Positions 3,956-63,927 of a stretch of DNA of 64,000 nucleotides are shown here, in pieces. The stretch's first letter is position 1. Each line of letters starts with the position of its first letter. Made by a program: the position numbers and the translations under genes. The stretch covers positions 124,001 through 188,000 of IMG/VR virus record IMGVR_UViG_3300035145_003993; one strand, written 5' to 3'. A model generated the notes under the pieces. That model did not search any database. It was given only the letters and a program-made list of their open reading frames with translations, and was not told the origin of the DNA.

Positions 3956-5227
3956 TTACATATTGATAACAATATCAGATTTATCATTATCAAAAGCTAG
4001 TTTGCAGTTTTTAGCTAATATCCAACATCTTCTCATTCTTTGTGAAGAAGGAGGTTTAGGTGCTCCTCCATCTGTTAGTATAATATAGCCATCGAATTTT
4101 TTTCTATTTTCTTGTGCATGTTTTGCAACAGCACTAAATGAAGTACCTCCTACCAAAGTTCTAGATATATTTGGTCTTTTGTTTTTCTTCCAGACAAATC
4201 CATTTTGATCATCTACCTTACTATCAAACTTGTATAAGAAAAAATCTGTTGACCTTGATAAATTATCTAATTCACTGTAGAATAAAGATAGTTCTTTATC
4301 ACTTACAGAACCACTTTCATCTATGTAAACTGCAATCATTGGTCTGTATATCTTTTTAGAACCGGGATGTATTCCGGGATATTTTCTATTTAATCTTCTT
4401 ATTGAAGATCTTCTTTCATCTTTTCTAGTAAATCCACAAAATCTTTTTAGTAAAGATTCCCAACTAATTTTAGAAGAAACAATCTTATAAATTTCAGATC
4501 TAGTTTCAGCTGGAATCGATCCCCAATTTCTTGATTCTGCTTCTTGTATTGCGTCTTTAATTAATTCTTTTAGTTTTCCTTTTAATAACTCTTTTTCTTC
4601 ATCAGACATATTATCCCATCCTTCATGATCATCGAAACCTATTTCAAATTTGTCTGATTCTTCTAAGAATTTTTTAATGTCTTTATTTTCCATTAATTTT
4701 TCAAAATAGTATTCTGAAGTTTTATTTCTTGGAAAACTTTCAATTAATGAAGATAGTTTTTCAAAATTATCTATTTCTTCTTGTGTTGCGTTTTTTCTTT
4801 GTGATTCATCTAAGAATAATTTTTTACCTGGAATTAGACCACCTTTTGGAAGTTCATGTTCAGGAATTGTAGAATTAATAGCTAAATCAGTTGAATAATT
4901 CCAGATTATATGAGGATCTTTTCTTCGGTCAGAAGTATGACCAAAAACTAAATGTAAACATTCATGTTTAAGTAATCCTGTTATTTCATGATTATTTAAG
5001 CCTGCTAGAAATTCTCTATTCCAATAAAGAGTTATATCATCATTTATACAAGTCACACCAGCTGTAGGTATTTGCGTTGTTTCTTCTTTATTTAATGACC
5101 TAAGAATTCTTGAGTAAAAAGGTTCATTCCAAAGAAAGTCAACAAGATGTTTTGTTAAATCAAATTTTTCAATTTCTAGTTCAGATACTTCGCGTTTTTT
5201 AAGAATGTTATTGTTATTTTTACTCAT
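3956..5227 (-). CDS. Metallopeptidase-like plus VWA-domain protein (MoxR partner)
   Basis: KHECLH HExxH motif; coiled-coil; IDESGS MIDAS, GGTSF, IILTDG. Confidence 0.85.
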   Translation of the reverse strand: MSKNNNNILKKREVSELEIEKFDLTKHLVDFLWNEPFYSRILRSLNKEETTQIPTAGVTCINDDITLYWNREFLAGLNNHEITGLLKHECLHLVFGHTSDRRKDPHIIWNYSTDLAINSTIPEHELPKGGLIPGKKLFLDESQRKNATQEEIDNFEKLSSLIESFPRNKTSEYYFEKLMENKDIKKFLEESDKFEIGFDDHEGWDNMSDEEKELLKGKLKELIKDAIQEAESRNWGSIPAETRSEIYKIVSSKISWESLLKRFCGFTRKDERRSSIRRLNRKYPGIHPGSKKIYRPMIAVYIDESGSVSDKELSLFYSELDNLSRSTDFFLYKFDSKVDDQNGFVWKKNKRPNISRTLVGGTSFSAVAKHAQENRKKFDGYIILTDGGAPKPPSSQRMRRCWILAKNCKLAFDNDKSDIVINM

Positions 5228-5237
5228 AATAATCCTC

Positions 5238-6320
5238 TTATTTGTTTAAAAGATTTCTGTTATTATTTACTATTTCAACAATATAGTTTCCAATTTCTTT
5301 GTGGAATTTTTGAATAGATTTAATATTCTTTCCTTTTGTTACACAAGACCAAAAATGAATCATCATCTCTTCAGAAATAATTTTTCCTAATTTTGCTGCA
5401 TTCTTAGCTTGAGATACTGTCCAATCATTAGTAGTAGAATGTTCACCTAATCTTTCAATTAAAGAGTTTATTCTATCATTAGACATTGCATCAATCTTTG
5501 GTTTACATTTATCGAAGCTTTTTAGCAATTCTTCGGGTGTTACAATAATTTCATATTTCTTAACAAAGTCAGTAAATTCAACTGCAGCTTCTTGACCAAT
5601 AAAACCAATTGATGTATTAAAAATATCAAATGTATCTTTATTAGATAAGAGATCAATATCATTATATTTTAAAACTTCGTCAAACCTTGCCCAAGAAGCT
5701 GGAGTTGGAAATACATTCCCAGGTTTAATTTTTTCTAAATTAACGTATAAATGAGAAGTTCTAGTTTTTAAAAATTCAATTATTAAATTATCTACATTTT
5801 TACTTTTTGCCCAATCAATCCAATCTTGTTTTGTTGGTTGTAAATCTATTGTCCAAAATCTTCTTAATAAAGCTGGATCCATTTCATTAACATCATATTC
5901 ATTACCATGATTAATAGCAGCAAATATTCTTGTTTCTGGGTGTATATCATAAGGGTTACCATTTTCATCATTTCCTAATTGTCTATCAAGAACAATTTGA
6001 AAGAAAGATTGTTGTACTGATGGTAATCCTCTATTAAATTCATCTAAGAATAATACAACTGGTTCATTACAAGCTCTTACAAACCAAGATGGCATGCAAA
6101 ATGTCATAATACCTTTTTCTTTCATTCCTTCAATATCAGGATAACCTTGAACATCACCTTCAGACATAATAGAAGCTCGAACATCTATTAAAGGTAGATT
6201 AATATCTTTAGATATTTGATTAACTAATGCTGATTTTCCTATGCCTGTACTTGCTCTCATAAGAACTGCATGGTGTGATGGTAGATTTTTAACAATTTTT
6301 AAAAAGCTTTTAATATTCAA
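5238..6320 (-). CDS. MoxR-like AAA+ ATPase
   Basis: Walker A ASTGIGKS, Walker B LFLDEFNR, AAIN, MDPALLRRF, PTPASW. Confidence 0.9.
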   Translation of the reverse strand: MNIKSFLKIVKNLPSHHAVLMRASTGIGKSALVNQISKDINLPLIDVRASIMSEGDVQGYPDIEGMKEKGIMTFCMPSWFVRACNEPVVLFLDEFNRGLPSVQQSFFQIVLDRQLGNDENGNPYDIHPETRIFAAINHGNEYDVNEMDPALLRRFWTIDLQPTKQDWIDWAKSKNVDNLIIEFLKTRTSHLYVNLEKIKPGNVFPTPASWARFDEVLKYNDIDLLSNKDTFDIFNTSIGFIGQEAAVEFTDFVKKYEIIVTPEELLKSFDKCKPKIDAMSNDRINSLIERLGEHSTTNDWTVSQAKNAAKLGKIISEEMMIHFWSCVTKGKNIKSIQKFHKEIGNYIVEIVNNNRNLLNK

Positions 6321-9236: not shown

Positions 9237-9803
9237 TTACCCAAATACACCACACTTAATTAAAGATTGTAATACATCAAGTAAAGCTTTTGTTGATGAT
9301 TCTTTACAAGTAGAACCAGTAAAATCCATTAAAGGACGCAAGCATTTTTCAATATCATCAGGATTAGTCATTAAATGTTGAGAGCAACTATCATATGAAT
9401 CTTTACAAGGCACATTTTGTATTGACTGTGATCTTATTTTATTATAATGGTCTAAAGACTCAGGGTGTGCGCAATGAAATTTAATATGGTCTACGTAATC
9501 CTGAGTTGTAACTTGATTATCGTTATCTAAATCAAAATGAGAATATAAGTCTTCAGGTGTAACATAGCCGTCATTATTAGGATCTAGATCATGATGTGTG
9601 TGTCCTTTTAATCCATCTAATTTTTTCGTTTCTAAATGATCATGATCATAATATTCTTCTTCAGAGTGTCCTGGACAATTACATGGATCACAATAGCATT
9701 CTCCACAAACTTCTTCACATTTACAAGGATTATATCCACATGCAAAACAAACATTTGAAGAAGCTTTGTCTAAAAATTCTTTTATAAGTTTTCTATCGTT
9801 CAT
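9237..9803 (-). CDS. Cys-rich, His/acid-rich, EF-hand-like protein
   Basis: CxxCxxxPCxC twice; DPNNDGYVTPED and DLDNDNQVTTQD loops. Confidence 0.65.
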   Translation of the reverse strand: MNDRKLIKEFLDKASSNVCFACGYNPCKCEEVCGECYCDPCNCPGHSEEEYYDHDHLETKKLDGLKGHTHHDLDPNNDGYVTPEDLYSHFDLDNDNQVTTQDYVDHIKFHCAHPESLDHYNKIRSQSIQNVPCKDSYDSCSQHLMTNPDDIEKCLRPLMDFTGSTCKESSTKALLDVLQSLIKCGVFG

Positions 9804-9814
9804 ATTAAAACCTT

Positions 9815-10990
9815 TCAGTATGAATATAAATATAACTTATCTTTGATCTTTTGTTGATTATCATGTGCTTGTTTTCTACTTAATCCTTTTTTAATACTTT
9901 CAGACATGATTCTTTGTGAATCTACAATATCTTCCATTAATTTACAATGACTTTCAGCATAATCTGTGATAAGATTAATATTTTTAATTACGTATTCTAA
10001 CCTTTTAATAGTAAAACATACAATATGAGCCGCATCTTTAAAAATAATTCTTTCTGAGGATGAGTGTGAAATATCTCTTTCAAGAAGTGTTGTACAGTTT
10101 TCAATTGCTGTTTGAAAATAAGATTTATATAACCTTGTAAGACCACAAATATTTTCTGTTAAGATAGGATTTTTTTTATGTGGCATTGCACTTGATCCTT
10201 TTTGCTTGGCTCTAAAAGGTTCAGCCATTTCATTTATTCCATCTAAACTGTAAATTCTTATATCATAAGAGATTTTTTCAATTGCAAGTACGAGCTGTAG
10301 TATGCCGTAAAAATAATCTAAGTAATGTTGTCTTGGAATAATTTGTGATGAAATAACAGGTTTAAGATCAAGTTGTTCTAAAGCTTTATGTTCACATTCA
10401 ACTGTATTAAAATAGTAATTCCCGGTAGCACCACTAAGTTTTCCTAAGCTTATTTTATCTTTAGATTCAAGTACTGAGTCATATCCTTTTCTCAAAAGAT
10501 GCAGCCAACGATATATTATATCATAATAAGTTTGTATTTCTGCAGCTTTTCCATGTGTTCTAGCAAGTATTCTGTTTTTCGATTCATCAGATTGTAACAG
10601 ATTTGACAAATGAAATATTAAACTACTTGCATAATCTAACACCACTTGTAGACTTTCTTTACACATTATTGATAAAGATGTATCAAGTATATCTGAAGAC
10701 GTTAAACCGTAATGAATCCATCTACCACTCTTGTCTGGAATAGACTCTTCTAACATTTGGACAAATGCTTGGACGTCATGATTAGTTTCTTCTTCTATTT
10801 CTTTCCAACGATTAATATTGATTTTAGCATTTTCTTTAATTACGTTGAATTCATCAGATGTAATTGTTGGATGAGTTATATTGTCTAATTGAGATTCAAG
10901 ATGAGCTAATTCTACTTTTAGCCAAGTGTTTAATTTATTTTCTGTTTTCCAAATATCATAAATTTCTTGAACTTTATATCTTGGTATCAT
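9815..10990 (-). CDS. purB: Adenylosuccinate lyase
   Basis: HYGLTSSDI, RTHGKAA, and the GSSAMPHKKNPILTENICGL signature. Confidence 0.93.
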   Translation of the reverse strand: MIPRYKVQEIYDIWKTENKLNTWLKVELAHLESQLDNITHPTITSDEFNVIKENAKININRWKEIEEETNHDVQAFVQMLEESIPDKSGRWIHYGLTSSDILDTSLSIMCKESLQVVLDYASSLIFHLSNLLQSDESKNRILARTHGKAAEIQTYYDIIYRWLHLLRKGYDSVLESKDKISLGKLSGATGNYYFNTVECEHKALEQLDLKPVISSQIIPRQHYLDYFYGILQLVLAIEKISYDIRIYSLDGINEMAEPFRAKQKGSSAMPHKKNPILTENICGLTRLYKSYFQTAIENCTTLLERDISHSSSERIIFKDAAHIVCFTIKRLEYVIKNINLITDYAESHCKLMEDIVDSQRIMSESIKKGLSRKQAHDNQQKIKDKLYLYSY

Positions 10991-11187
10991 TTTTCCTCTT
11001 TCGTTATTTTTTCTAGAAAGTCTGTAGGGATTTGTACTATTTCTTTATTTAATAAGATTTTAGATAGCGTTTTGCTTTCTTGATAAGAAGAATTTTTTCC
11101 ATAAGATATAAAAATCCCAACATCACATCTACTGTTTGAAAACTTATTTGTATTAAGAACAAGATCACCTTTAGTTAAGATGCCCAA
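10987..11187 (-). CDS. Small SH3/KOW-like protein
   Basis: LTKGDLV...DVGIFISY; sits between purA and purB. Confidence 0.55.
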   Translation of the reverse strand: MGILTKGDLVLNTNKFSNSRCDVGIFISYGKNSSYQESKTLSKILLNKEIVQIPTDFLEKITKEEK

Positions 11188-12371
11188 ACTATTTCTCCTC
11201 TTTTAGGACCAGTTGTAAAAGATATACGTTTTACACCAGTGTGGATTTCTATTGTATTTAATAATTCTTTAAATCCAGGATCAGTTGTTTTAACGCTGTT
11301 AATTCTAGTCATCGAATAGTTTCTTCCGTGTAAGAAGAAAGCAGGTTTCTCTATATGTGTCATCACGTCTGTTTTAACAACACACAAATGATCTACTCCA
11401 TTTTGTATAATAGCTAATTTAACTTCGTCTAAATCTAACCAACCACACTGTCTAGGACGCCCAGTTGTCGCACCAAACTCTTGACCAACTTCAGCTAATA
11501 TCTTTTCTTGACCATCTGTAATGATACTAGGAAAATTACCGCTACCTACCTTAGTTTTGTAAGATTTAATTACTCCTATTACTTCATCGATTTGCTTATG
11601 ATTTAATCCTGTAGAGTTGATTGCTCCACCTACAGAAGGTGAAGATGATGTAACGTCTGGATAGTTATCTGAAAATATGTTAAGGCCACTTCCTTGTGCA
11701 CCTTCTAAAAGAATATTATAATCTTTTTTATAATATTCGTGAAGAACATTTTCGTCACTTAGTTGATACATTCGCAAGATTGAAACCATATTTTCATATT
11801 CAGAAATCCAAGAATTAAATAGATCAAAGTCAGGTTTTAAGTCTTCTAAACTTTCACCGTCTTGTGCTCTTCTTTCTTGTAAGTCATAAAACCTTGATTG
11901 AATTTTAATGAGAGACTGTTCAGGCATATTTACAAAATCTTTAACCAAAATAGAGTCCCGAGCGTAAAAATCAGAGTATGCAGGACCAATTCCTTTTGCA
12001 GTCGTGCCTAGTCTTTTCTGATATTTGAGTCGATCAATTATTTTATGAGTTGGCTCAATTATAGGACAATATCCCGAAACTGAAAGATTTGAACCAGGTT
12101 TTACATTTAAGTCTGTTACTTCTTTGCAAAAGTCTTCTACATCTATAACACATCCTCTTGAAATAATGTTAATAACTTCTTTTGTTAAAACACCTACAGG
12201 AAGAATGTGTGTAACAAACTTATTACCTTTTCTATCGTAAACTGTATGACCAGCATTCCCTCCTCCTTGAAACCTTACAACGACGTCAGCCCAAGTTTGA
12301 ACTAAATCATCAACTACTCTACCTTTACCTTCGTCTCCATGTTGAAGACCTAAAACTAATTTTACTGGCAT
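11175..12371 (-). CDS. purA: Adenylosuccinate synthetase (canonical PurA, not PurZ)
   Basis: QHGDEGKG, RFQGGGNAGHT, GTTAKGIGPAY, LEGAQG, EFGATTGRPRQCGWLD. Confidence 0.93.
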   Translation of the reverse strand: MPVKLVLGLQHGDEGKGRVVDDLVQTWADVVVRFQGGGNAGHTVYDRKGNKFVTHILPVGVLTKEVINIISRGCVIDVEDFCKEVTDLNVKPGSNLSVSGYCPIIEPTHKIIDRLKYQKRLGTTAKGIGPAYSDFYARDSILVKDFVNMPEQSLIKIQSRFYDLQERRAQDGESLEDLKPDFDLFNSWISEYENMVSILRMYQLSDENVLHEYYKKDYNILLEGAQGSGLNIFSDNYPDVTSSSPSVGGAINSTGLNHKQIDEVIGVIKSYKTKVGSGNFPSIITDGQEKILAEVGQEFGATTGRPRQCGWLDLDEVKLAIIQNGVDHLCVVKTDVMTHIEKPAFFLHGRNYSMTRINSVKTTDPGFKELLNTIEIHTGVKRISFTTGPKRGEIVWAS

Positions 12372-12374
12372 AAT

Positions 12375-13436
12375 TTACTTTCTATTAAAAATATGTGGAT
12401 TACCTTCGATATGTGATGAAGAGCTTTGAACTCTAAAAACTGCATTTTCTCTAAGGTCATTTAAATTTTGAGCTCCGCTGTAAGACATTCCACTTTTAAC
12501 GTTTGACATAATTTCATTTAAAACTTCTTTAACAGATCCTTTAAAAGGTACATAAGAAGAAACGCCTTCAACTGAATTATATGTTCCTTTCCAGTCTTTT
12601 TGCGCTGCTTTAGAAGCCATACCATTATACTTTTTTGTTTTTTCACCTTCTTCGTTAAGAATCACTTCACCAGGTGTTTCTTCAGTTCCACTAAGAATAG
12701 AACCTAACATGACGAAATCTGCACCAGCGGCTAATGATTTAACAATATCACCACTATTTTTAATACCACCATCAGCAATAATATAAGAAGTTTTTTGATC
12801 TAATTTTTGTAACTCTAATTTAGCTTTGTAGCAATCAAGAACAGCTTGAAATGTTGGTATTCCGTGACCTGTTTGGATTCTAGTAGTACAAATACTACCA
12901 CTTCCGACCGAAGATCTTATTGCGTGAGCTCCAGCTTGAGTTAATCTTTTATATGCATGACCTGTTGCAATATTACCAGCAATTACAAACAAATGATCAT
13001 ATTCACTTCTGATAAACTCGATAGCATTTTCCATAAGTACATGATCACCATGTGCAATATCAATACAGACAATATTTAAATCATTTTTTACTAATTCAGA
13101 TAATCTTTCTTTATAATCTCCTGATGCTCCTATCGCTGCTGATTTGTAAAGATTATTATTTACTTTTGATAAAAGATTTACTTGATGATCTATAGAATTA
13201 TACCGATGTATAATTCCTAATCCACCTTGATCTATCATAGCATTAGACATATCATATTCTGTTACTGTAGACATAGGCGAACTAATAATTGGTATATTAA
13301 ACACTAAATCTTTTTTATTTTTATTTGTTGATACTTTAACAGATGTATCTATATTTTTCCTTGTTTTAAGGTTAGAATATTGTGGTTCTAAAATTACATC
13401 ATCAAAACTTAAAACTTTTTTATTTATAACTTTCAT
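12375..13436 (-). CDS. IMPDH/GMP reductase family enzyme without CBS domains; GMP reductase favoured
   Basis: [37 protein letters not shown]; no Arg-Tyr flap dyad. Confidence 0.85.
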
Positions 13437-13458
13437 TCATACCTCTTTAGTCTTAAAC

Positions 13459-13487
13459 ACTATAATAAATAAAATTTCTATTTACAC
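13459..13487 (-). promoter_or_regulatory. Phage promoter GTGTAAA-N16-TATAGT
   Basis: Upstream of the purine operon. Confidence 0.7.
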
Positions 13488-13494
13488 CAAAGAA

Positions 13495-38837: not shown

Positions 38838-39254
38838 TTATTCTTTGTATTGTTCAACAATAATAGAAGACTGTTTAAGAATACAAACTCCTGACATATC
38901 TCTATATTCTTCTTTGTATACAACCTTCTTGATTCCACTATTAATAATTGCCATAGCACAGTTTTCGCAAGGACTTAATGTTATATACATTACCTTATCT
39001 TTTGGATTATTATAATCAAGTTTTAAAAGAGCATTTATTTCAGCATGCAACAATCCGCTACATCCAGGTTCACTAGATTTAGGTTCGTTTAGCATTCCAG
39101 AAGCTCGTCCATTATATCCTAAAGAAAGTACTTGTGTGTTATCTGACGTTACTATAAGTGCTCCAACTTTAAAATCTGGATGATGACTTCTTTGTGCAAT
39201 TGTTTCTGTCATTTTCATCCATATTTTATCCCATGAGGGCCTATTTATATTCAT
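38838..39254 (-). CDS. dCMP deaminase
   Basis: KVGALIV, GYNG, LHAEINA, SPCENC. Confidence 0.9.
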   Translation of the reverse strand: MNINRPSWDKIWMKMTETIAQRSHHPDFKVGALIVTSDNTQVLSLGYNGRASGMLNEPKSSEPGCSGLLHAEINALLKLDYNNPKDKVMYITLSPCENCAMAIINSGIKKVVYKEEYRDMSGVCILKQSSIIVEQYKE

Positions 39255-43155: not shown

Positions 43156-43365
43156 ATGTACCAAATTTTAGAAAATTATATACAACTTGTATTTGAAAAC
43201 GAAAAAAATAAAAACAAAACGTTTAAAGATATACTTAATAGTTTAAAAAATAGTCAAAATCCTAAAAAGGTACTAAGAAATACAGATCCTATAGAAAGAA
43301 ATACAGATCAAATAGGATTTGACCAATTAATTAAAAAATCTAGTAATTCTAATCAAACGCGTTAA
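43156..43365 (+). CDS. Short leader-bearing ORF, possible remnant
   Basis: MYQILENYIQLVFENE; RBS present; overlaps the dnaE stop. Confidence 0.45.
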   Translation: MYQILENYIQLVFENEKNKNKTFKDILNSLKNSQNPKKVLRNTDPIERNTDQIGFDQLIKKSSNSNQTR

Positions 43366-46300
43366 TCTTTTTAAGCTTAGCTAAACTTGATGACATACCC
43401 CAGTTAACATCATTACTAATATCAGCCAACCAAGTTGTAAATTCAATTTCACCTTCCATATCTCCCCATACTCGAAGCCATCCACTTCGATTATCAATAT
43501 CGACGCATTTCCATCTCATAAATGATTTACCGTTTTTAGTTGTTTTTCTAATAACTTCTGTAACAGTAAACCATCCAATTCCACGCTCACCTTTTGGTAT
43601 ATCAAAAATACTATTGATTTGCTTCTGTTTTAGTTTTTTAACTAAGCTTGGTGGAAACAATAAATCGTCATTTGCATCATTACTGAGTTCAAAATAGTTT
43701 TTAATTTTAGTACTTCTTGACCAATCACTAACAACTCTGTATTGTGAGATTAACTTTTCGACAATTGGAATGATTTCTTCACCATTTTTATTTGCTTTTT
43801 TAATAGCAGTTTTTGTCATTCCAAAGCTTCCTTTCTTTAAAATCATATAATTATCCAAGATTAAATCATGCATTTGTTTGTGATTGTCTAGTGTTCCATC
43901 TTGAAATTCTTGGAGTGACTTAAATGCTTCCATCTTTGTTAGTGATGAAAAAGCTGTTTTATTCATTTTTGAATGTTTCCATTCTCCTTCTTTATTGTAA
44001 AAAAGATCTTGTAAATTATTATATGGTCTATTTACAAATATTTCTTCAACAGCTTTGTCACCTACTCCTTTAAGAGATGTCAACGGAGGAACAAACGATT
44101 TTAAATCTTCTGAATATTCCCATTGAGATCCTGAGTGATTTATATCAATTGCTGATATGTCATATCCTAGTGCCTTAATTTCTGCAATTACTTTGGACAT
44201 TCCTTTAGGATTACCATTTTCTGATTGTAAAACAGTTGCTAGCCAGTCTGTTTCGTAGTGTGTATGAAGCCACGCAGCGTAATATGAGTCGATTGCATAA
44301 GAAACAGCATGACTTTTATTGAAACCGTAAACAGCAAAACCTTCTATTTCTTCCCAAAGTTTTTTAGATATATGTTCGGGTACATCATTAATTTCTTTTG
44401 CACCTTTAATAAACTTTTCTCTTGCAATTGTTTTTTCATCTTTTTTATTTCCCATTGTTGCGAGATTATTCTTAACAAGGGTTTTTCTCAGCTTATCAGC
44501 TTCACCTGGATCAAAACCTGATAGTTTTTGTGCAAGTAACATAAATTGCTCTTGAAATACAACGTAAGAAAATGTTGGTCCTAAAACTTCTTCGATAATC
44601 GGATGATCGTATTTAATTTGTTCTGCGTTTTGTTTAGATTTAACATATTTTTTATGAACATTAGCTTTAAGAGGTCCAGGACGATAAATAGCAGTTAAAG
44701 CTGCTAATTCTTCAATACTTTCTGGTTTAGCTTCTAATGAAAAGTTTCTAGCTCCTGTATTTGTAAATTGGAATATTCCTACAAATCTTCCATCATGATA
44801 TACATGCTTCCAGACATCTTGATCATTTTGTTCGTGAAATCTACAATTTAAATGTTTATCAAAGAATTTTTTAGCATCACTAAATTGTGGATTATTATTA
44901 CCCTCCTTTTTAAGGATTCTATAAATACAATTTTCAATATCTTTTAATAAGGATAAACCTAAGAAATCAAATTTAATAAAACCATTATCTTCTAAGTTTC
45001 TAAAATTTAATCCTTCTGACCATGGTGTTTGTAATTCTCCTCTTACACCTACGATAGGCATAGTTGTTTCTAAATGTTCAGGATCAGCTACTAACACACC
45101 CCCTGCATGACGACCAATTGCTCTATTCTGCATAAACAAAGAAGCAATATGAGTTTCAACTTCAGGATATCTTTCCATAAAATCTTTATATTCTGGAGAA
45201 TACTTTTTACAATCTTCATGCTTAAGAACAAAAACAGATTTTTCTTGATCGTCACCTTTTGCCATTTTCATAACTTGATCGTGAAGAGGACCAGTTACTT
45301 TATTTACTTCATCATACGGAATATCATAAAACTTAGATATATCTTTAATAAGAGACTTAAGCTTTAAAGTATTAAAGTTAGAAACAGGAATAACAGCATC
45401 GTTTCCATATAATTCTTTTGCAGCATTAATTAACTCATCACGATCACCAGCATCTGTATCAATATCAGGCCATGAAACCCTATGCCTTCCTAAGAATCTT
45501 GCCCAAAGAAGATCGTATGGAAGAGGGTCAACTTGTGTAATGCCTAATAAATAATTAACTAAAGAGCCAGCTCCTGATCCTCTTCCTGGCCCTAATAAAG
45601 TTTTCTTTTCAGCCTTCTTAAAAATTTCATACATCGTAATAAAATATGCTTCGTGACCAAGATACTTTATATCTGATAATTCTTCTTTAGCACGATCAAC
45701 ATAAACTTGGTTTGTATGAAAACCATGGCTAACGAGTGAATCTTTAACTAAAGAAGATAAGTGTTGAAAAGGAGTTTTATTTGGAACGTTTATTGTAGGT
45801 AGTTTAACTCCTGTATCAATCCAAGTATCTTCAAATTCATTCCAAACGATATCATGAGTTCGATTAATAGCATCACGAACTAATTCTTCATTACCTTTAT
45901 AAAATTCATAAGTAGGATATGAATCAAGAAATTCTTCCCACATTTGAGAAGCATTTTTTGGATATAATTCACACTTAAGATCTTCAAATTCTGGAAGAGA
46001 AAGATTATCTCTTTTTCCTAACCAACCAAGTTTTTTATATAATTCTCGAGCTTGCCATTTTTCATTTGAAGGGTAATGTGAATCTGCTGTACAAATAAGA
46101 GGAATACCTGTTAATTTATGGTGTTCTATAAGATAATCATTAACAGTATGCTGTTTTTCTAATTTATTAAACTGTAATTCAAGTTTAAAATTGTTTTCTC
46201 CAACACAAGAAACAAACCTATCTGTTAGATTTAATAATTCTTTCTGAATTTGTTCACGTGATTGATTATGAACTTCACCTCTTAAAATACGATTACTATA

Positions 46301-46444
46301 AATACCACCAAGGCAGTTGTGCACTAAAATATTGTTAGCAAAAAAATTGTGATTACCTTCAACAGTAATGTCGTAAACGTCAGAAGTCTCATCTATTTCT
46401 TCAATAATTTCAACTTCAATAAATTTTGTTTGAATGTCTTTCAA
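43349..46444 (-). CDS. dnaE: DNA polymerase III alpha, C-terminal part, preceded by a C-intein
   Basis: IntC ending VHN|C; GPGRGSGAGS, PDIDTD, GRHAGG, KFDFLG, YGFNKSHA. Confidence 0.95.
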   Translation of the reverse strand: MKDIQTKFIEVEIIEEIDETSDVYDITVEGNHNFFANNILVHNCLGGIYSNRILRGEVHNQSREQIQKELLNLTDRFVSCVGENNFKLELQFNKLEKQHTVNDYLIEHHKLTGIPLICTADSHYPSNEKWQARELYKKLGWLGKRDNLSLPEFEDLKCELYPKNASQMWEEFLDSYPTYEFYKGNEELVRDAINRTHDIVWNEFEDTWIDTGVKLPTINVPNKTPFQHLSSLVKDSLVSHGFHTNQVYVDRAKEELSDIKYLGHEAYFITMYEIFKKAEKKTLLGPGRGSGAGSLVNYLLGITQVDPLPYDLLWARFLGRHRVSWPDIDTDAGDRDELINAAKELYGNDAVIPVSNFNTLKLKSLIKDISKFYDIPYDEVNKVTGPLHDQVMKMAKGDDQEKSVFVLKHEDCKKYSPEYKDFMERYPEVETHIASLFMQNRAIGRHAGGVLVADPEHLETTMPIVGVRGELQTPWSEGLNFRNLEDNGFIKFDFLGLSLLKDIENCIYRILKKEGNNNPQFSDAKKFFDKHLNCRFHEQNDQDVWKHVYHDGRFVGIFQFTNTGARNFSLEAKPESIEELAALTAIYRPGPLKANVHKKYVKSKQNAEQIKYDHPIIEEVLGPTFSYVVFQEQFMLLAQKLSGFDPGEADKLRKTLVKNNLATMGNKKDEKTIAREKFIKGAKEINDVPEHISKKLWEEIEGFAVYGFNKSHAVSYAIDSYYAAWLHTHYETDWLATVLQSENGNPKGMSKVIAEIKALGYDISAIDINHSGSQWEYSEDLKSFVPPLTSLKGVGDKAVEEIFVNRPYNNLQDLFYNKEGEWKHSKMNKTAFSSLTKMEAFKSLQEFQDGTLDNHKQMHDLILDNYMILKKGSFGMTKTAIKKANKNGEEIIPIVEKLISQYRVVSDWSRSTKIKNYFELSNDANDDLLFPPSLVKKLKQKQINSIFDIPKGERGIGWFTVTEVIRKTTKNGKSFMRWKCVDIDNRSGWLRVWGDMEGEIEFTTWLADISNDVNWGMSSSLAKLKKINAFD
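46316..46444 (-). mobile_element. Split intein C-fragment (43 aa) of DnaE
   Basis: VYDITVEGNHNFFANNILVHN followed by Cys+1. Confidence 0.93.
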
Positions 46445-50136: not shown

Positions 50137-50367
50137 CTAAGTCTCAGATTTAGTTACCCACAGACCGTCTTGATTTTCTAAATCCATTGTTTCTCTAGAC
50201 GATCCATTTAAGTAAACAATTAGACCTTTAACAAAGTAATGATCTTGAATAATTTCTGTAACTAAACAGTTATTTTTTATCCTTTCACCATAAAAAAATA
50301 TATCAATCATGTCACCTTCTTTTAACTGTGATACTTCGTGTATTTCATTTTTATAATTACTGGACAT
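50137..50367 (-). CDS. Small SH3/KOW-like protein
   Basis: LKEGDMIDIF...CLVTEI. Confidence 0.6.
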   Translation of the reverse strand: MSSNYKNEIHEVSQLKEGDMIDIFFYGERIKNNCLVTEIIQDHYFVKGLIVYLNGSSRETMDLENQDGLWVTKSET

Positions 50368-51538
50368 TGATTTTAGGTTTTCCCCATCTAAGTGTTATTT
50401 GTGTATTGTTATTTAACATGTTTGTGCAAATATTAAAAGGTTCTACGTCATAGAATTTTAAAATCTTATAAAGATCATCATACAAATAATCTATTCCTTC
50501 TTCCAAGATTTGGGTACCATTAAAAACATTTAAATCACCTTCAGCAATTACAGGACCTATCCTACACATTATCTCTTCTATAATTGCATTAAATGCTGAT
50601 TCAACTTGATTTGCATTAACAACGAAAGAGAATTCATTAGGAATTGTATTGAGTGTGTTTCCGCTTATAGACTGTAGTGCGCTTGTATTTGCATTGTCTA
50701 CACCTAAAGTATATACAGTAATACAAGGATCTATTGCTGTAGAGTAAATGCAATTGTTATCATTAATATTTCTTATGTTGTTTTGAACAAAAGACTGAGA
50801 AGGCCCTGATCCTTCATTTGGCGATCCATCTGATATTAAGAGAATGTAATAAGACTCGTAGTTTGTCGTCTGTATTTGTGTCATTGCTTCTTGTAAAGGT
50901 GCTATAAAGTTTGTTCCACCTCCCGGACTTCTATTATTAACAATTGAAAGAACAGATTGCTTATGCTGTTGATTTTTTCCTATACTTGAAGAAACTATTA
51001 TATTACTATTGTATAATATAACAGAGTAACTTAAATTAAAATCAGAGTTAACAAATTGACTAACTGTATCTCTAAGTTGAACTATTCTGTTTCCACTCAT
51101 TGAACCACTATAATCTAAAAGCATTATTACAGCTGCATCTATTAAGTCAACGTCATGAACTTCTTCAGGGACAGTTATTATAACTGACTTGGTAGTTTGT
51201 CCGCGTCCTGGGTTATAAGAAGAAGTTATTCCGTATTTTCTATTACAATAGTTTTCAACACTACACTCTAGTCCTAGATCTATACATTGAAAGTTTGGTG
51301 TAACGTTAGTTGAAAGTGACGAAGCGCAATTATTTAAAAAATTAGGTGTACAAATTTCTTCAGTACTATTTGTCTCAATAATAGAAATTCCTAGATTTAC
51401 ACTACAAGAATCTAAAACTTGTTTTTCTTCCAATATGTTTAAAGATATTCTACCGTATTGTATTGTTATAAATGCTAAAGTTGATAACACAGCAGACAAT
51501 AACATAATAGTTAGTGCTGCAAATCCTTTGTTTTTCAT
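50357..51538 (-). CDS. TadG/PilY-like pilin-leader protein with VWA domain
   Basis: KG|FAAL prepilin-like N-terminus and TM helix; LDYSGSM MIDAS, GGTNF, LISDG, VYTLGV. Confidence 0.7.
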   Translation of the reverse strand: MKNKGFAALTIMLLSAVLSTLAFITIQYGRISLNILEEKQVLDSCSVNLGISIIETNSTEEICTPNFLNNCASSLSTNVTPNFQCIDLGLECSVENYCNRKYGITSSYNPGRGQTTKSVIITVPEEVHDVDLIDAAVIMLLDYSGSMSGNRIVQLRDTVSQFVNSDFNLSYSVILYNSNIIVSSSIGKNQQHKQSVLSIVNNRSPGGGTNFIAPLQEAMTQIQTTNYESYYILLISDGSPNEGSGPSQSFVQNNIRNINDNNCIYSTAIDPCITVYTLGVDNANTSALQSISGNTLNTIPNEFSFVVNANQVESAFNAIIEEIMCRIGPVIAEGDLNVFNGTQILEEGIDYLYDDLYKILKFYDVEPFNICTNMLNNNTQITLRWGKPKINVQ

Positions 51539-54425: not shown

Positions 54426-55391
54426 TTAATTGTTGAATTGTTTTTTAACTTGATTTATGGCTCTTACATCATCATTCCACATCCTTGTAAAGATTTTTTC
54501 TTCACCAGATTTATTGCCGTTTAATTCTTCGCGGCGACAAGGGTAAATTGAATCTTCTTCATTGAATTCAAACAAATCGTTTTTAGGCTCTGGATGATAT
54601 AAATTAGTTCCTTTTGAAGTAAAAGTACCATCTGCTTGTTTAACTCTAAATGTTCTAACATAATGCATGTCAGGTTTTTCAAAATCTAAGCAAGTTGCAA
54701 CTTCAGGAATTCTTTCAACAACTAGTCTTGCTATTTTAGTAGCAATAATATTATCAACCTCAGGCTGAATTTGTACATCTTGTCTTTGTTTAATAAGACC
54801 AATTAAATCTTTTAAATTAAACCTTGCAATATAAAATGTTTCGATAGATTTTGGCATAATAACTCTAGCGTCCATTAAAGAAATTAGTTTTGAATCTACC
54901 ATATCAGAATATAATTGTTTTGCAGCAGCAGCAACTTCAATAAATCTATGGTAAAAATCAGAATTTTCAATAGACTCTGGAACTAAAATATTATCGTGTC
55001 GTAGGTCTCTATCACCTGTGCATTGAGCAGCAAATGATCCTGCTCTGTGTCTAATTAAGTGTGTTACGGTTTGAGTATCAATACCACTTATCCTAAAAGT
55101 AAATCCTAAACATTCCATAGGCGTTGGTAAGGCTCTAAAATTTAGTACGTCTTGAAGGTTTTGTGAGGCCTCTTCAGGTGAAGCATTATTAAAGTCAGTT
55201 TCAAAAGGTCGATCAGCCCATGTTGCCTTGGTCATATTCCAAGCTATTTCTTGTGCTTGCTTTTGTGTTGGAGCATCAATCACTTCAATTTTAAGTGATT
55301 CTAAATTGTTAATATAGTTTGTAACAGGAACTTCGTTAAACTTTAAAAGCATAGGAAGTTGAATCTTATCTAAATCATTATTAATTGGCAA
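54426..55391 (-). CDS. Divergent ThyX-like flavoprotein
   Basis: RHRAGSFAAQC (Cys at the RHRx7S position), DARVIMP, NLKDL...QR. Confidence 0.8.
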   Translation of the reverse strand: MPINNDLDKIQLPMLLKFNEVPVTNYINNLESLKIEVIDAPTQKQAQEIAWNMTKATWADRPFETDFNNASPEEASQNLQDVLNFRALPTPMECLGFTFRISGIDTQTVTHLIRHRAGSFAAQCTGDRDLRHDNILVPESIENSDFYHRFIEVAAAAKQLYSDMVDSKLISLMDARVIMPKSIETFYIARFNLKDLIGLIKQRQDVQIQPEVDNIIATKIARLVVERIPEVATCLDFEKPDMHYVRTFRVKQADGTFTSKGTNLYHPEPKNDLFEFNEEDSIYPCRREELNGNKSGEEKIFTRMWNDDVRAINQVKKQFNN

Positions 55392-57145: not shown

Positions 57146-57868
57146 TTACTCGTGATTATTAATATAACTGTTAACAGTTTCTGGCCAAAGATCTTTAATA
57201 ATATCTAACATTCTAAATGCTAATTGTTGAATTTCCCATTGAGCTCCTTCATGTGTTCTTAAATTTATAAACTTTAATATGTTATTTAAATTCGCAGAAG
57301 CGTAATATTCTGTATAAAGATTTTGTGGTAAAATTCCACGCGCTTGTTCTCTGCATATACCATTGTTTACTAAATCATCAAATAATTTTAAAGAATTTTT
57401 GTGATAATTTTTAATAACATTCGATGCTTTAGTTTTAATTTTAACGCTACTTACTGCAGAGTCAATTTCTAATATAGGATCAATTAATTCATCTTGATTT
57501 GAAGATTGTCTATTTGATTTGTGTTGAGTTCTAAATTGATTAGGTTCATAAAATTCTATATTAGAATCTGTATATCTTCTAGAGATTTCGTTGTATGACC
57601 AAGTTCTGTGTCTATGATGTTGTGATCGAACAAATAATGGAACTTTAATTCTAAAAGTTGCAAAATTATGTTCTAAAGTAGATGTATGTTTATGTTTAAT
57701 TAAATAATTAATTAACTTTTTATCTTTATTATCAAGACTTTCTTTGTGAACTCCGAATGATACCCTTGCTGAATTTACTATTGTAATATCTTCGCCAACA
57801 TATTGAACTAATTCTATTTTTCCTATGCCATCTTCATACAGATTTTTTTCAATAGTATCTATTTTCAA
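57146..57868 (-). CDS. thyX: Flavin-dependent thymidylate synthase
   Basis: NSARVS, HTSTLEH, RHRTWSYNEISRRY, EQARGILP. Confidence 0.95.
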   Translation of the reverse strand: MKIDTIEKNLYEDGIGKIELVQYVGEDITIVNSARVSFGVHKESLDNKDKKLINYLIKHKHTSTLEHNFATFRIKVPLFVRSQHHRHRTWSYNEISRRYTDSNIEFYEPNQFRTQHKSNRQSSNQDELIDPILEIDSAVSSVKIKTKASNVIKNYHKNSLKLFDDLVNNGICREQARGILPQNLYTEYYASANLNNILKFINLRTHEGAQWEIQQLAFRMLDIIKDLWPETVNSYINNHE

Positions 57869-62865: not shown

Positions 62866-63927
62866 TTATCCTTGACAGCTTAAACATTCATCAGGATCAG
62901 CGAAATCTTGTAACTTATCTTGCTTAACCTTCTGACTAACCTTTTCAGCTGAAGCTCCTGCGTTTGTCCTTAGATAATATAATCCTTTTAACTTCTTTTT
63001 CCAAGCTCTAATATGTACTGCATTAACATAAGATTTATCAGTACCAGCGGGAAAGAATAAATTAACACTTTGACCTTGGCAAATAAATTCTTGTCTATCA
63101 CCTGCGTGATCTATAATCCATCTTTGATCTAATTCAAATGCTGTTTTAAATACTTCTTTATGCCAATCTGACATGTATTCAAGGTGTTGAACAGATCCTT
63201 CTGCTAAGATAATAGATTTCCATTGTTCATTCATCCAAGATTCAATATCAATTTTTTCTACATTGTCAGCATACTCTCTTAAAACTTTTTCTAAGTGATG
63301 ATTTTTCACTAAATAAGAACCTACTCTTGTTCTATGTGTATATGCATTACTTTTCCAAGGTTCAATAGATGGTGAAGTCCCTGCAATAATAGAAGAATTA
63401 GCATTTGGAGCAATTGCTAATAGATGAGAATTCCTAACTCCGTAACCAGATCCATCAGGACATTCACCTTTTTTAATCGCCAACTCTTTTGTACGCTGTT
63501 TTGCTTTTTCTTTAATTAATGAGAATATATTAATATTTGTTGCTTTTGCAATCCCTGATTCAAACGGAATATTTTTTGATTGAAGATAGGAGTGAAATCC
63601 CATTGCACCTAAACCAAGTGATCTTTCTCTCATAGCGGAAAATTTTGCTTTGTGCAAATAGTCAGGAGCATTTTCAATAAAAAATTGTAGGACGTTATCT
63701 AAATACTCTATTAAATCTTCAACAATATTTGTGTCTTTCCATTCATCAAACTTTTCAACATTTAGTGAGCTTAAACAACATACTGCACTTCTTTCAGGAG
63801 ATGTTGCCAAATGGATCTCATTACAATTGTGAACGAGCATGTTATTTGCAAAAAAATTTTTATTGTCTTTAACAGTTATGTCAAAAACAGGTTCTTTTGT
63901 TTCTCTTTTAATTATTTTTAATCCCAT
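62866..63927 (-). CDS. nrdA: Ribonucleotide reductase alpha subunit, C-terminal part, preceded by a C-intein
   Basis: VHN|CNEI, VCCLSSLN, RSLGLG, AIAPNANSS, ICQGQS, GLYYLR, C-terminal CxxC. Confidence 0.93.
   Translation of the reverse strand: MGLKIIKRETKEPVFDITVKDNKNFFANNMLVHNCNEIHLATSPERSAVCCLSSLNVEKFDEWKDTNIVEDLIEYLDNVLQFFIENAPDYLHKAKFSAMRERSLGLGAMGFHSYLQSKNIPFESGIAKATNINIFSLIKEKAKQRTKELAIKKGECPDGSGYGVRNSHLLAIAPNANSSIIAGTSPSIEPWKSNAYTHRTRVGSYLVKNHHLEKVLREYADNVEKIDIESWMNEQWKSIILAEGSVQHLEYMSDWHKEVFKTAFELDQRWIIDHAGDRQEFICQGQSVNLFFPAGTDKSYVNAVHIRAWKKKLKGLYYLRTNAGASAEKVSQKVKQDKLQDFADPDECLSCQG
63826..63927 (-). mobile_element. Split intein C-fragment (34 aa) of NrdA
   Basis: VFDITVKDNKNFFANNMLVHN|C, with its own ATG after an upstream in-window stop. 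Confidence 0.88.

What the first reader, a model, noticed from the sequence alone, without database searches (positions are those of the whole stretch)
9815..13487. Purine operon that may convert guanine nucleotides to adenine nucleotides
Seen: one promoter drives a GuaB/GuaC-family gene, then purA and purB. The GuaB/C flap ([22 protein letters not shown]) lacks the Arg-Tyr dyad. Known: IMPDH needs that dyad, GMP reductase lacks it, and GMP->IMP->adenylosuccinate->AMP is a complete route. Inference: this very AT-rich phage converts a G-rich host pool into AMP, which would fit a GC-rich myxobacterial host.
Basis: partly seen in the sequence, partly recalled or inferred. Interest (0 to 1): 0.75.

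Follow-up and report, generated by a model that had tools for sequence, protein, structure and literature searches.

The report
Phage operon predicted to turn GMP into AMP
An uncultured, very AT-rich marine jumbo phage carries three back-to-back genes that most likely convert guanine nucleotides into adenine nucleotides, but the first enzyme's activity is inferred from sequence and the claimed GC-rich myxobacterial host has no support.

Summary
On the minus strand lie a 353-aa IMPDH/GMPR-family gene (12375-13436), purA (11175-12371), a 66-aa ORF, and purB (9815-10990), separated by gaps or overlaps of 3 to 13 nt.

The first enzyme keeps the Cys-Thr-Glu catalytic residues and has no CBS domain. 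Its flap is 10 residues shorter than in IMPDH, and the missing stretch includes the Arg-Tyr dyad. All 120 homologues inspected share this conserved short flap. PurA and PurB keep their catalytic residues.

The module is syntenic in all 23 close viral contigs, including a complete 239.5-kb genome. That genome lacks GMP synthase, phosphoribosyltransferases and PurM/PurL-type de novo purine enzymes. So GMP to IMP to adenylosuccinate to AMP is the best reading (about 0.65).

Caveats:
- The enzyme sits in a mostly viral clade outside both canonical GuaB and canonical GuaC.
- It fails every curated cut-off and is closest overall to bacterial IMPDH.
- Its activity is untested.

The single-promoter claim is unverified. 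The GC-rich myxobacterial host is unsupported: relatives are marine, the genome is 27% GC, and GC3 is 15% with only three tRNAs. The same genome also encodes dCMP deaminase, ThyX and ribonucleotide reductase, so both purine and pyrimidine pools may be shifted towards A and T.

The parts
13437..13494 (-). 58-nt gap between uvdE and the GMPR-like gene. It holds a sigma70-like TTGGTG-17-TATTAT, an AAGAGG ribosome-binding site 5 nt before the ATG, and a conserved 15-mer TCTTTGGTGTAAATA (13479-13493). Possible promoter, not shown.
   Evidence: Sequence read. The 15-mer is kept in the 8 closest relatives and occurs once in the genome. The promoter scan is not above chance.
12375..13436 (-). CBS-less, dyad-less IMPDH/GMPR-family enzyme, 353 aa; predicted GMP reductase. 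Cys183 and Thr185 lie in GSGSICTTR, Glu290 in VEG, and the short flap is residues 270-291.
11175..12371 (-). Adenylosuccinate synthetase (PurA), 398 aa, GTP-type, with a roughly 30-residue C-terminal deletion.
   Evidence: PF00709 316.8 bits. PurA models score 306 bits and PurZ 120. D13, K16, N38, H41, T129, R143, Q224, T239, R303, R305, K331 and D333 are kept.
10987..11187 (-). Conserved 66-aa ORF of unknown function between purA and purB. It is dispensable in at least one strain.
   Evidence: Homologous 60-75-aa ORFs lie at the same place in relatives. A variant in the source sample replaces 10993-11182 with 35 nt. No family match.
9815..10990 (-). Adenylosuccinate lyase (PurB), 391 aa, lacking about 45 C-terminal residues.
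   Evidence: TIGR00928 303 bits and PF00206. His91, His171, Ser295 and the GSSAMPHKKNP signature are kept.
38838..39254 (-). dCMP/cytidine deaminase. Context: the C-to-U/T counterpart in the same genome.
   Evidence: PF00383 81 bits.
57146..57868 (-). Flavin-dependent thymidylate synthase ThyX. Context only. A second ThyX-like gene lies at 54426-55391.
   Evidence: PF02511 161.9 and 65.5 bits.
62866..63927 (-). C-terminal part of the ribonucleotide reductase large subunit, after an intein. Context only; the gene runs on beyond the window.
   Evidence: PF02867 and Intein_splicing.

Best explanation
The three genes form a phage-encoded purine interconversion route. The CBS-less, dyad-less enzyme acts as a GMP reductase (GMP + NADPH to IMP + NH3). 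PurA then condenses IMP with aspartate at the cost of GTP, and PurB releases fumarate to give AMP. Guanine nucleotides freed from host RNA and DNA are thereby turned into the adenine nucleotides that a 27% GC genome needs in about 2.65-fold excess over G. Together with the phage's dCMP deaminase, ThyX and ribonucleotide reductase, this would shift the infected cell's nucleotide pool towards A and T.

Shown: gene identities, conserved catalytic residues, loss of the IMPDH hydrolysis dyad, strict synteny, and absence of other purine genes.

Inferred: the GMP reductase activity, the cofactor, co-transcription, and the pool-rebalancing purpose.
For: Active site:
- Cys183, Thr185 and Glu290 are kept. 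These are the residues shown to be needed in E. coli GMP reductase (PMC2525682).
- The Arg-Tyr dyad that IMPDH uses to hydrolyse E-XMP* (PMC9375230) is deleted along with 10 flap residues.
- All 7 canonical GuaB sequences in my set have DRY[FG]Q (4 other CBS-bearing representatives lack it). Every CBS-less protein, including E. coli and S. aureus GuaC, lacks it.
- All 120 homologues inspected share this conserved short flap (alignment A1).

Partner enzymes:
- PurA and PurB keep their catalytic residues.

Synteny:
- uvdE, GMPR-like, purA, purB are in the same order in all 23 close viral contigs.
- A second, distant viral lineage also places a short PurA within 5 kb of its GMPR-like gene.

No other purine genes:
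- No GMP synthase in the window's genome or in a complete 239.5-kb relative with terminal repeats.
- No phosphoribosyltransferase or PurM/PurL-type enzyme in either. The trio is therefore a closed linear path only if step one is GMP to IMP.

Cellular paralogues:
- In four bacterial genomes the CBS-less paralogue coexists with one canonical GuaB and no canonical GuaC.

Precedent:
- Mycobacterial GuaB1 is IMPDH-like in sequence but is an NADPH-dependent GMP reductase (PMC9790621).

Expression and context:
- Marine metatranscriptome contigs 96-97% identical cover all three genes.
- dCMP deaminase, ThyX and RNR lie in the same genome.
Against: - No curated model is passed: IMPDH TIGR01302 scores 278.5 against a cut-off of 481.5, and GMP reductase NF003470 scores 228 against 397.
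- By overall sequence and predicted fold the protein is nearer to bacterial IMPDH catalytic domains (240 bits; Foldseek 38-40% identity) than to solved GMP reductases (177 bits).
- In the tree it lies in neither GuaC clade, and deep nodes are weak.
- IMPDH keeps a slow Thr/Glu water-activation route (PMC2525682), so residual IMPDH chemistry is not excluded.
- No member of this clade has been assayed, to my knowledge.
- RNA-library contigs may contain carried-over DNA.
Confidence: 0.65

Rival explanations
1. The first enzyme is a minimal IMP dehydrogenase that hydrolyses E-XMP* through the ancestral Thr/Glu route. The module would then push host IMP into both branches, XMP/GMP and AMP, boosting purine supply in general rather than converting G to A.
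For: - The closest solved relatives by sequence and fold are bacterial IMPDHs.
- IMPDH-like motifs are present: ADGGI, YNGMAS, and a C-terminal EGNPH resembling ESHPH.
- The best NCBIfam hit is IMPDH.
- A Thr321/Glu431 water-activation route exists in IMPDH (PMC2525682).
Against: - The Arg-Tyr dyad and 10 flap residues are gone in every family member.
- All 7 canonical GuaB sequences sampled keep the dyad.
- There is no GuaA in this genome or in a complete relative, and no phage route that makes IMP.
- The canonical GuaB clade excludes the phage clade with 100/100 support.
Confidence: 0.1
2. The module acts on deoxynucleotides released from degraded host DNA (dGMP to dIMP to succinyl-dAMP to dAMP), feeding DNA synthesis without passing through ribonucleotide reductase.
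For: - The phage PurA relative PurZ uses dGMP (known from the Z-genome pathway, from memory).
- The phage is a large DNA virus with high demand for dATP.
- Nothing in the sequence forbids deoxy substrates outright.
Against: - Asp222 of the conserved ADGG motif is kept; by my recollection the equivalent Asp binds the ribose hydroxyls in IMPDH and GMPR.
- PurA Arg303, which contacts the IMP 2'-OH in E. coli PurA by my recollection, is kept.
- The PurZ model is missed by a wide margin, 120 against 300 bits.
- The phage encodes its own ribonucleotide reductase.
Confidence: 0.08
3. The module is mainly a takeover or counter-defence device. It would lower GTP and (p)ppGpp, or refill adenine nucleotides after host systems that destroy ATP or dATP, rather than matching pools to genome composition.
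For: - The chemistry is the same as in the best explanation, so all enzyme evidence applies.
- PurA also consumes GTP.
- Standalone GMPR-like genes are widespread in marine phages of varied composition (PMC7029224).
Against: - There is no adjacent defence or anti-defence signature.
- My literature searches found no report linking phage PurA or GMPR to counter-defence.
- The co-occurrence with dCMP deaminase and ThyX fits composition matching more simply.
Confidence: 0.12

Closest known systems
Bacterial GMP reductase GuaC (E. coli type 1, Bacillus/Staphylococcus type 2), EC 1.7.1.7
   Same: About 350 aa with no CBS domain. Catalytic Cys, Thr and Glu are present. The flap is short, has no Arg-Tyr dyad, and the [ST]Y-x-x-x-EG stretch aligns with GuaC EY-R-A-A-EG.
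   Different: - About 31-32% identity, and it fails the GuaC equivalogue cut-offs.
- It forms a separate, mostly viral clade.
- The flap is 3 residues shorter.
- It has ADGGI rather than SDGGC, and an IMPDH-like C-terminal EGNPH motif.
Bacterial IMP dehydrogenase GuaB (catalytic domain)
   Same: Best overall sequence and fold match: 38-40% identity, TM about 0.85. Shared motifs around the Cys loop, ADGGI and the C-terminus.
   Different: No CBS/Bateman domain, a 10-residue flap deletion that removes the Arg-Tyr dyad, and a position outside the GuaB clade with 100/100 support.
Mycobacterial GuaB1 and trypanosomatid GMP reductases (IMPDH-like GMPRs)
   Same: They show that an IMPDH-like backbone can be an NADPH-dependent GMP reductase (PMC9790621, PMC13249884).
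   Different: Those enzymes carry CBS domains and are allosterically regulated by ATP and GTP. The phage enzyme has none, so it would be unregulated.
CBS-less paralogues in Legionella (PDB 3r2g, deposited as IMPDH), Bdellovibrionota, Melainabacteria, Cloacimonadota and Myxococcota
   Same: CBS-less and dyad-less, 35-49% identical. They coexist with one canonical GuaB and no canonical GuaC.
   Different: Their flap has GuaC length (…EWKTAEG). They are not next to purA or purB. I found no assay of any of them.
Phage PurZ/PurB pathway for 2-aminoadenine (Z) genomes
   Same: A phage-encoded PurA-family synthetase paired with adenylosuccinate lyase chemistry.
   Different: Here the synthetase keeps Asp13 and the whole PurA residue set, and scores 306 bits on PurA against 120 on PurZ (cut-off 300). 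The product would be ordinary AMP.
Annotated 'GMP reductase' genes of phages (Xanthomonas jumbo phage XacN1; deep-ecotype pelagimyophages)
   Same: A phage-borne IMPDH/GMPR-family gene read as a nucleotide-metabolism auxiliary gene (PMC7029224).
   Different: XacN1's gene is a canonical type-1 GuaC, sister to E. coli GuaC in the tree, and stands alone. No cultured phage in the collection searched has the GMPR-purA-purB trio.

Membership tests
GMP reductase (GuaC) | Catalytic Cys, Thr and Glu (E. coli C186, T188, E289) | tested here: met
   Cys183 and Thr185 in GSGSICTTR and Glu290 in VEG. All are invariant in alignments A1 to A3.
GMP reductase (GuaC) | Short flap without the IMPDH Arg-Tyr dyad, and no CBS subdomain | tested here: met
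   The flap is 10 aa shorter than in GuaB and 3 aa shorter than in E. coli GuaC. There is no CBS hit.
GMP reductase (GuaC) | Score at or above the curated equivalogue cut-off (NF003470, NF003966, TIGR01305, TIGR01306) | tested here: not met
   228/397, 212.5/344, 208.8/492 and 178.3/466 bits.
GMP reductase (GuaC) | Placement inside a canonical GuaC clade | tested here: not met
   The window clade (100/99) sits in a mostly viral clade, apart from the E. coli/XacN1 and S. aureus GuaC branches. Deep nodes are weak.
GMP reductase (GuaC) | NADPH-dependent reductive deamination of GMP to IMP | not testable with these tools
   Needs an enzyme assay or genetic complementation.
IMP dehydrogenase (GuaB) | Arg-Tyr catalytic dyad on a long mobile flap | tested here: not met
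   The SDRYFQ segment is deleted. All 7 canonical GuaB sequences in the set have DRY[FG]Q.
IMP dehydrogenase (GuaB) | Bateman (2 x CBS) regulatory domain | tested here: not met
   A single uninterrupted PF00478 match over residues 9-348, with no PF00571.
IMP dehydrogenase (GuaB) | Equivalogue cut-off (TIGR01302) and placement in the GuaB clade | tested here: not met
   278.5 against 481.5 bits. The GuaB clade, at 100/100 support, excludes it.
Adenylosuccinate synthetase (PurA) | Catalytic and ligand-binding residues: D13, K16, H41, Q224, R303, R305, and K331/D333 for GTP | tested here: met
   13 of 14 checked positions are identical to E. coli PurA; the other is S414T. PF00709 scores 316.8 bits. 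The residue list comes from my own knowledge of E. coli PurA.
Adenylosuccinate synthetase (PurA) | Curated equivalogue cut-off | tested here: not met
   NF002223 scores 306.5 against 402. The C-terminal third is shortened.
PurZ (succino-amino-deoxyadenylate synthase) | NF038379 cut-off and loss of the PurA Asp13 | tested here: not met
   120.3 against 300 bits. The GDEGKG motif with Asp13 is kept.
Adenylosuccinate lyase (PurB) | Catalytic His/Ser and the GSSxMPxKxNP signature loop | tested here: met
   His91, His171, Ser295 and GSSAMPHKKNP are kept.
Adenylosuccinate lyase (PurB) | Equivalogue cut-off and a full-length C-terminal domain | tested here: not met
   TIGR00928 scores 303.1 against 326.2 and matches profile positions 1-382 of 436. 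About 45 C-terminal residues are missing, as in all relatives.

The most novel reading that the evidence does not exclude
The trio works directly on deoxynucleotides from degraded host DNA (dGMP to dIMP to dAMP). That would give an AT-rich phage a reductase-independent shortcut from host G to phage A, carried out by a virus-specific lineage of dyad-less enzymes that arose from an IMPDH-like backbone independently of cellular GuaC.
Probability: 0.08. Interest if true: 0.8.

Novelty: new variant of a known kind. Interest (0 to 1): 0.5.

Why it matters
Phages are known to carry nucleotide-metabolism genes. A complete, conserved three-step route from guanine to adenine nucleotides has not been described in the literature I could search.

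If the first enzyme is a GMP reductase, three things follow:
- A cosmopolitan group of marine jumbo phages reshapes the purine balance of its host to fit a 27% GC genome. This would mirror the familiar dCMP deaminase plus thymidylate synthase route on the pyrimidine side.
- A large, mostly viral, unassayed clade of the IMPDH/GMPR family would gain a function. At least 406 viral contigs carry it, and some copies hold inteins in the catalytic loop.
- It would be a second case, after mycobacterial GuaB1, where an IMPDH-like sequence is a reductase. That bears on how databases name these proteins; JGI calls this family 'IMP dehydrogenase'.

Tried and rejected
- **Z-genome (PurZ) reading of the PurA homologue.** Rejected: Asp13 and the PurA residue set are kept, and the PurZ model is far below cut-off.
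- **GuaB3-type protein.** Rejected: only 81 bits on TIGR01304.
- **Canonical GuaB or GuaC membership.** Rejected by cut-offs and by the tree.
- **Near relatives among cultured phages.** None found by megablast or tblastn. Most 'phage' hits are host contamination.
- **Close cellular relatives.** None with a single-protein scan. The A2 alignment was too diverse to search with. A3 found only homologues of 49% identity or less.
- **Gene context of cellular CBS-less paralogues.** No purA, purB or guaA within 5 kb.
- **Promoter proof.** The consensus scan is not above chance, and the conserved 15-mer is unique in the genome, so no phage-wide promoter motif emerged.
- **Host identification.**
  - Atlas taxa and cluster names gave only weak hints: one 'Flavobacteriia' MAG label, Bacteroidota among PurA neighbours, and a SAR11 single-cell contig for the more distant lineage.
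- **Fold comparison.** It could not separate IMPDH from GMPR, because the Cys loop and flap are modelled with low confidence.
- **Literature.** Searches for a described phage GMPR-purA-purB module found nothing relevant.
Full report
**What the window is.** The 64-kb window is bases 124001-188000 of a single 211,364-bp contig. IMG/VR classes the contig as a linear viral genome, about 84% complete. It is 27.4% GC. It encodes a DnaE-type polymerase, GroEL, an ATP-dependent ligase and other proteins that match phage families. It is therefore an uncultured jumbo bacteriophage. No cultured phage in the collection resembles it at the DNA level, and the polymerase is only about 30% identical to any other.

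**The observation.**
- All genes lie on the minus strand: a 353-aa IMPDH/GMPR-family protein (12375-13436), PurA (11175-12371), a 66-aa ORF (10987-11187) and PurB (9815-10990).
- The junctions are a 3-nt gap, a 13-nt overlap and a 4-nt overlap.
- Upstream, after a 58-nt gap, lies a UV-damage endonuclease gene, uvdE. Downstream, after 11 nt, lies a Cys-rich EF-hand protein.
- Pfam and NCBIfam confirm the three enzyme families.

**The first enzyme: residues.** I aligned it with E. coli GuaB and GuaC from the annotated K-12 record, S. aureus GuaB and GuaC, and phage and cellular homologues.
- It has no CBS domain.
- It keeps the catalytic Cys183 and Thr185 (GSGSICTTR) and Glu290 (VEG).
- Its flap is 10 residues shorter than in IMPDH. 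The missing stretch is the SDRYFQ segment that carries the Arg-Tyr dyad.
- That dyad activates water to hydrolyse the covalent E-XMP* intermediate in IMPDH (PMC9375230).
- Cys, Thr and Glu are the residues shown by mutation to be needed in E. coli GMP reductase. The flap that carries the hydrolase function is thought to be a later addition specific to IMPDH (PMC2525682).
- All 7 canonical GuaB sequences I sampled have DRY[FG]Q (4 other CBS-bearing representatives lack it). Every CBS-less one, including both reference GuaCs, lacks it.
- The short flap GMASKxAQKxWKG[ST]Y[NS]S[IV]EG is a strongly conserved consensus across the 120 closest database homologues. Many of its positions are invariant or nearly so in alignment A1.

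**The first enzyme: family placement.**
- It passes no curated cut-off. IMPDH scores 278.5 against 481.5 bits, and GMP reductase 228 against 397.
- By overall sequence and predicted fold its nearest solved relatives are bacterial IMPDH catalytic domains (240 bits, 38-40% identity). Human GMPR2 scores 177 bits.
- In a maximum-likelihood tree of 78 sequences, the window's clade (support 100/99) lies within a larger, mostly viral group (99 in the quick tree).
- That group is separate from the canonical GuaB clade (100/100) and from the long GuaC branches. Deep nodes are weak and the tree is unrooted.
- So it is not a member of GuaB, and not a member of either canonical GuaC group. It is a distinct dyad-less lineage.
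- Overall likeness to IMPDH does not decide function. Mycobacterial GuaB1 is IMPDH-like and carries CBS domains, yet it is an NADPH-dependent GMP reductase (PMC9790621; PMC13249884).

**PurA and PurB.**
- PurA keeps 13 of 14 catalytic and binding positions of E. coli PurA. These include Asp13, His41, Arg303, Arg305 and the guanine-specific Lys331 and Asp333.
- It is not a PurZ: 120 bits against a cut-off of 300.
- PurB keeps His91, His171, Ser295 and the GSSAMPHKKNP loop.
- Both are shortened at the C-terminus, and the relatives share this. That is why they fall just under the equivalogue cut-offs.

**Conservation and context.**
- The protein database holds a large family of 350-358-aa homologues at 62-96% identity, mostly from marine metagenomes.
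- In metagenome contigs of up to 256 kb, and in all 23 close IMG/VR contigs, the order uvdE, GMPR-like, purA, (small ORF), purB, EF-hand gene is kept.
- In all, 406 viral contigs carry a relative.
- In a second lineage, 46-51% identical, the gene usually stands alone. In eight loci a short PurA of about 330 aa lies within 5 kb, so the pairing has arisen or persisted twice.
- Neither the window's genome nor a complete 239.5-kb relative with terminal repeats encodes GMP synthase.
- Neither encodes a phosphoribosyltransferase or a PurM/PurL-type enzyme.
- The three genes are thus the phage's whole purine toolkit. They form a closed path only if the first step is GMP to IMP.
- The nearest cellular homologues (35-49%) are CBS-less paralogues in Bdellovibrionota, Legionellales, Melainabacteria, Cloacimonadota, Myxococcota and others.
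- In four such genomes the paralogue coexists with one canonical GuaB and no canonical GuaC. That fits a reductase role but does not prove it.

**Expression and promoter.**
- The 58-nt gap upstream holds TTGGTG-17-TATTAT and a good ribosome-binding site.
- A 15-mer over the -35-like element is kept in the eight closest relatives.
- The -35 matches only 3 of 6 positions. Promoter-like hits are at chance level in this AT-rich DNA, and the motif is not repeated elsewhere in the genome.
- Contigs from three marine metatranscriptome runs of one sample are 96-97% identical to the window. They cover all three genes and bridge the uvdE/GMPR-like, GMPR-like/purA and purB/EF-hand junctions.
- This is compatible with transcription, and with read-through from uvdE. 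DNA carry-over cannot be excluded, and a contig is not a single transcript.
- 'One promoter drives the operon' therefore remains unverified.

**Host.** I found nothing that points to a myxobacterium or to a GC-rich host.
- The source run is a wetland metagenome, and the other holders are seawater and marine samples.
- The genome is 27.4% GC with a third-codon-position GC of 15.5%. The three genes share this (13-19%), so they are long-term residents of an AT-rich lineage.
- Only three tRNAs are present. By inference, this would poorly support such codon use in a host with GC-rich codons.
- Weak hints favour AT-rich marine bacteria:
  - One close homologue is filed under a Flavobacteriia MAG.
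  - Bacteroidota appear among the PurA neighbours.
  - A homologue from the more distant lineage sits on a SAR11 single-cell contig.
- The host remains unknown.
- An AT-rich host would not refute the pathway. The phage needs A:G of about 2.65. By inference from general knowledge, ribosomal RNA, a large nucleotide store, is roughly balanced in A and G in any host.

**Wider picture.** The same genome encodes a dCMP/cytidine deaminase, ThyX (plus a second ThyX-like gene) and a ribonucleotide reductase. C-to-T and G-to-A conversions may therefore act together to fit the pool to an AT-rich genome. This is inference.

**Verdict.**
- GMP to AMP conversion is the best explanation (about 0.65).
- The main rival is a dyad-less IMPDH (about 0.1).
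- A deoxynucleotide variant and a takeover or counter-defence purpose are not excluded.
- Phage 'GMP reductase' genes are already annotated, in XacN1 and in pelagimyophages (PMC7029224).
- I found no description of the complete three-gene route or of this viral enzyme clade.
- I rate it a new variant of a known kind, of moderate interest. One enzyme assay would settle it.

Noticed in passing
window 43349-46444 (-) and 62866-63927 (-): The DnaE-type polymerase ORF begins inside an intein C-terminal splicing region. The ribonucleotide reductase large subunit is also split by an intein. Both replication genes appear to be intein-bearing.
   Followed up: partly
proteins P0121, P0135, P0139 (metagenomic homologues of window 12375-13436): Some homologues of the GMPR-like enzyme (493-722 aa) carry Hint/LAGLIDADG inteins inserted in the catalytic Cys loop, near residue 178-180. 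Inteins usually sit in genes that are under strong selection in phages.
   Followed up: partly
window 38838-39254, 57146-57868, 54426-55391 (all -): dCMP/cytidine deaminase, ThyX and a second, divergent ThyX-like gene. ThyA is absent. Together they form a pyrimidine C-to-T route in the same genome as the purine module.
   Followed up: partly
window 10987-11187 (-); source-sample variant joint 10993 to 11182: The 66-aa ORF between purA and purB is conserved in relatives as a 60-75-aa ORF sharing a GDLV…LSxILLxKxIVxxPT pattern. One strain in the source metagenome replaces it with 35 nt. Its function is unknown.
   Followed up: partly
L001 7064-7720 (also L019 and L031): Some relatives carry an extra ORF of about 218 aa between the GMPR-like gene and purA. 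It has no Pfam or NCBIfam match.
   Followed up: partly
window 13479-13493 (-): The 15-mer TCTTTGGTGTAAATA in the uvdE/GMPR-like gap is conserved in the eight closest relatives but occurs only once in the genome. It is a possible regulatory site.
   Followed up: partly
window 9237-9803 (-): A 188-aa protein with a Cys-rich N-terminus and two EF-hand-like DxDxDG loops always follows purB in relatives (34-76% identity). Whether it belongs to the module is unknown.
   Followed up: no
L041, L044, L045, L058, L062, L069, L079, L083: In a second viral lineage (GMPR-like 46-51% identical), a short PurA of about 330 aa lies within 5 kb, with no purB within 8 kb. It scores 275-282 bits on PurA models and 131 on PurZ. 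Two of these proteins have GDCGKG in place of GDEGKG.
   Followed up: partly
L095-L174; genomes G001-G005: Cellular CBS-less, dyad-less paralogues are concentrated in predatory or host-dependent bacteria such as Bdellovibrionota, Halobacteriovorax, Legionellales and Vampirovibrionia/Melainabacteria. In four genomes examined they accompany one canonical GuaB and no GuaC. The Legionella homologue has a solved structure, deposited as IMPDH (3r2g).
   Followed up: partly
window 3956-6320 (-) and 50357-51538 (-): A MoxR-like AAA ATPase sits next to a VWA/metallopeptidase (DUF2201) protein, and there is a further VWA protein. These are pairs of unknown role in this phage.
   Followed up: no
G000 113443-115906 (outside the window): Only three tRNA genes were found in the 211-kb contig: Met-CAT, Thr-TGT and Lys-TTT.
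   Followed up: no
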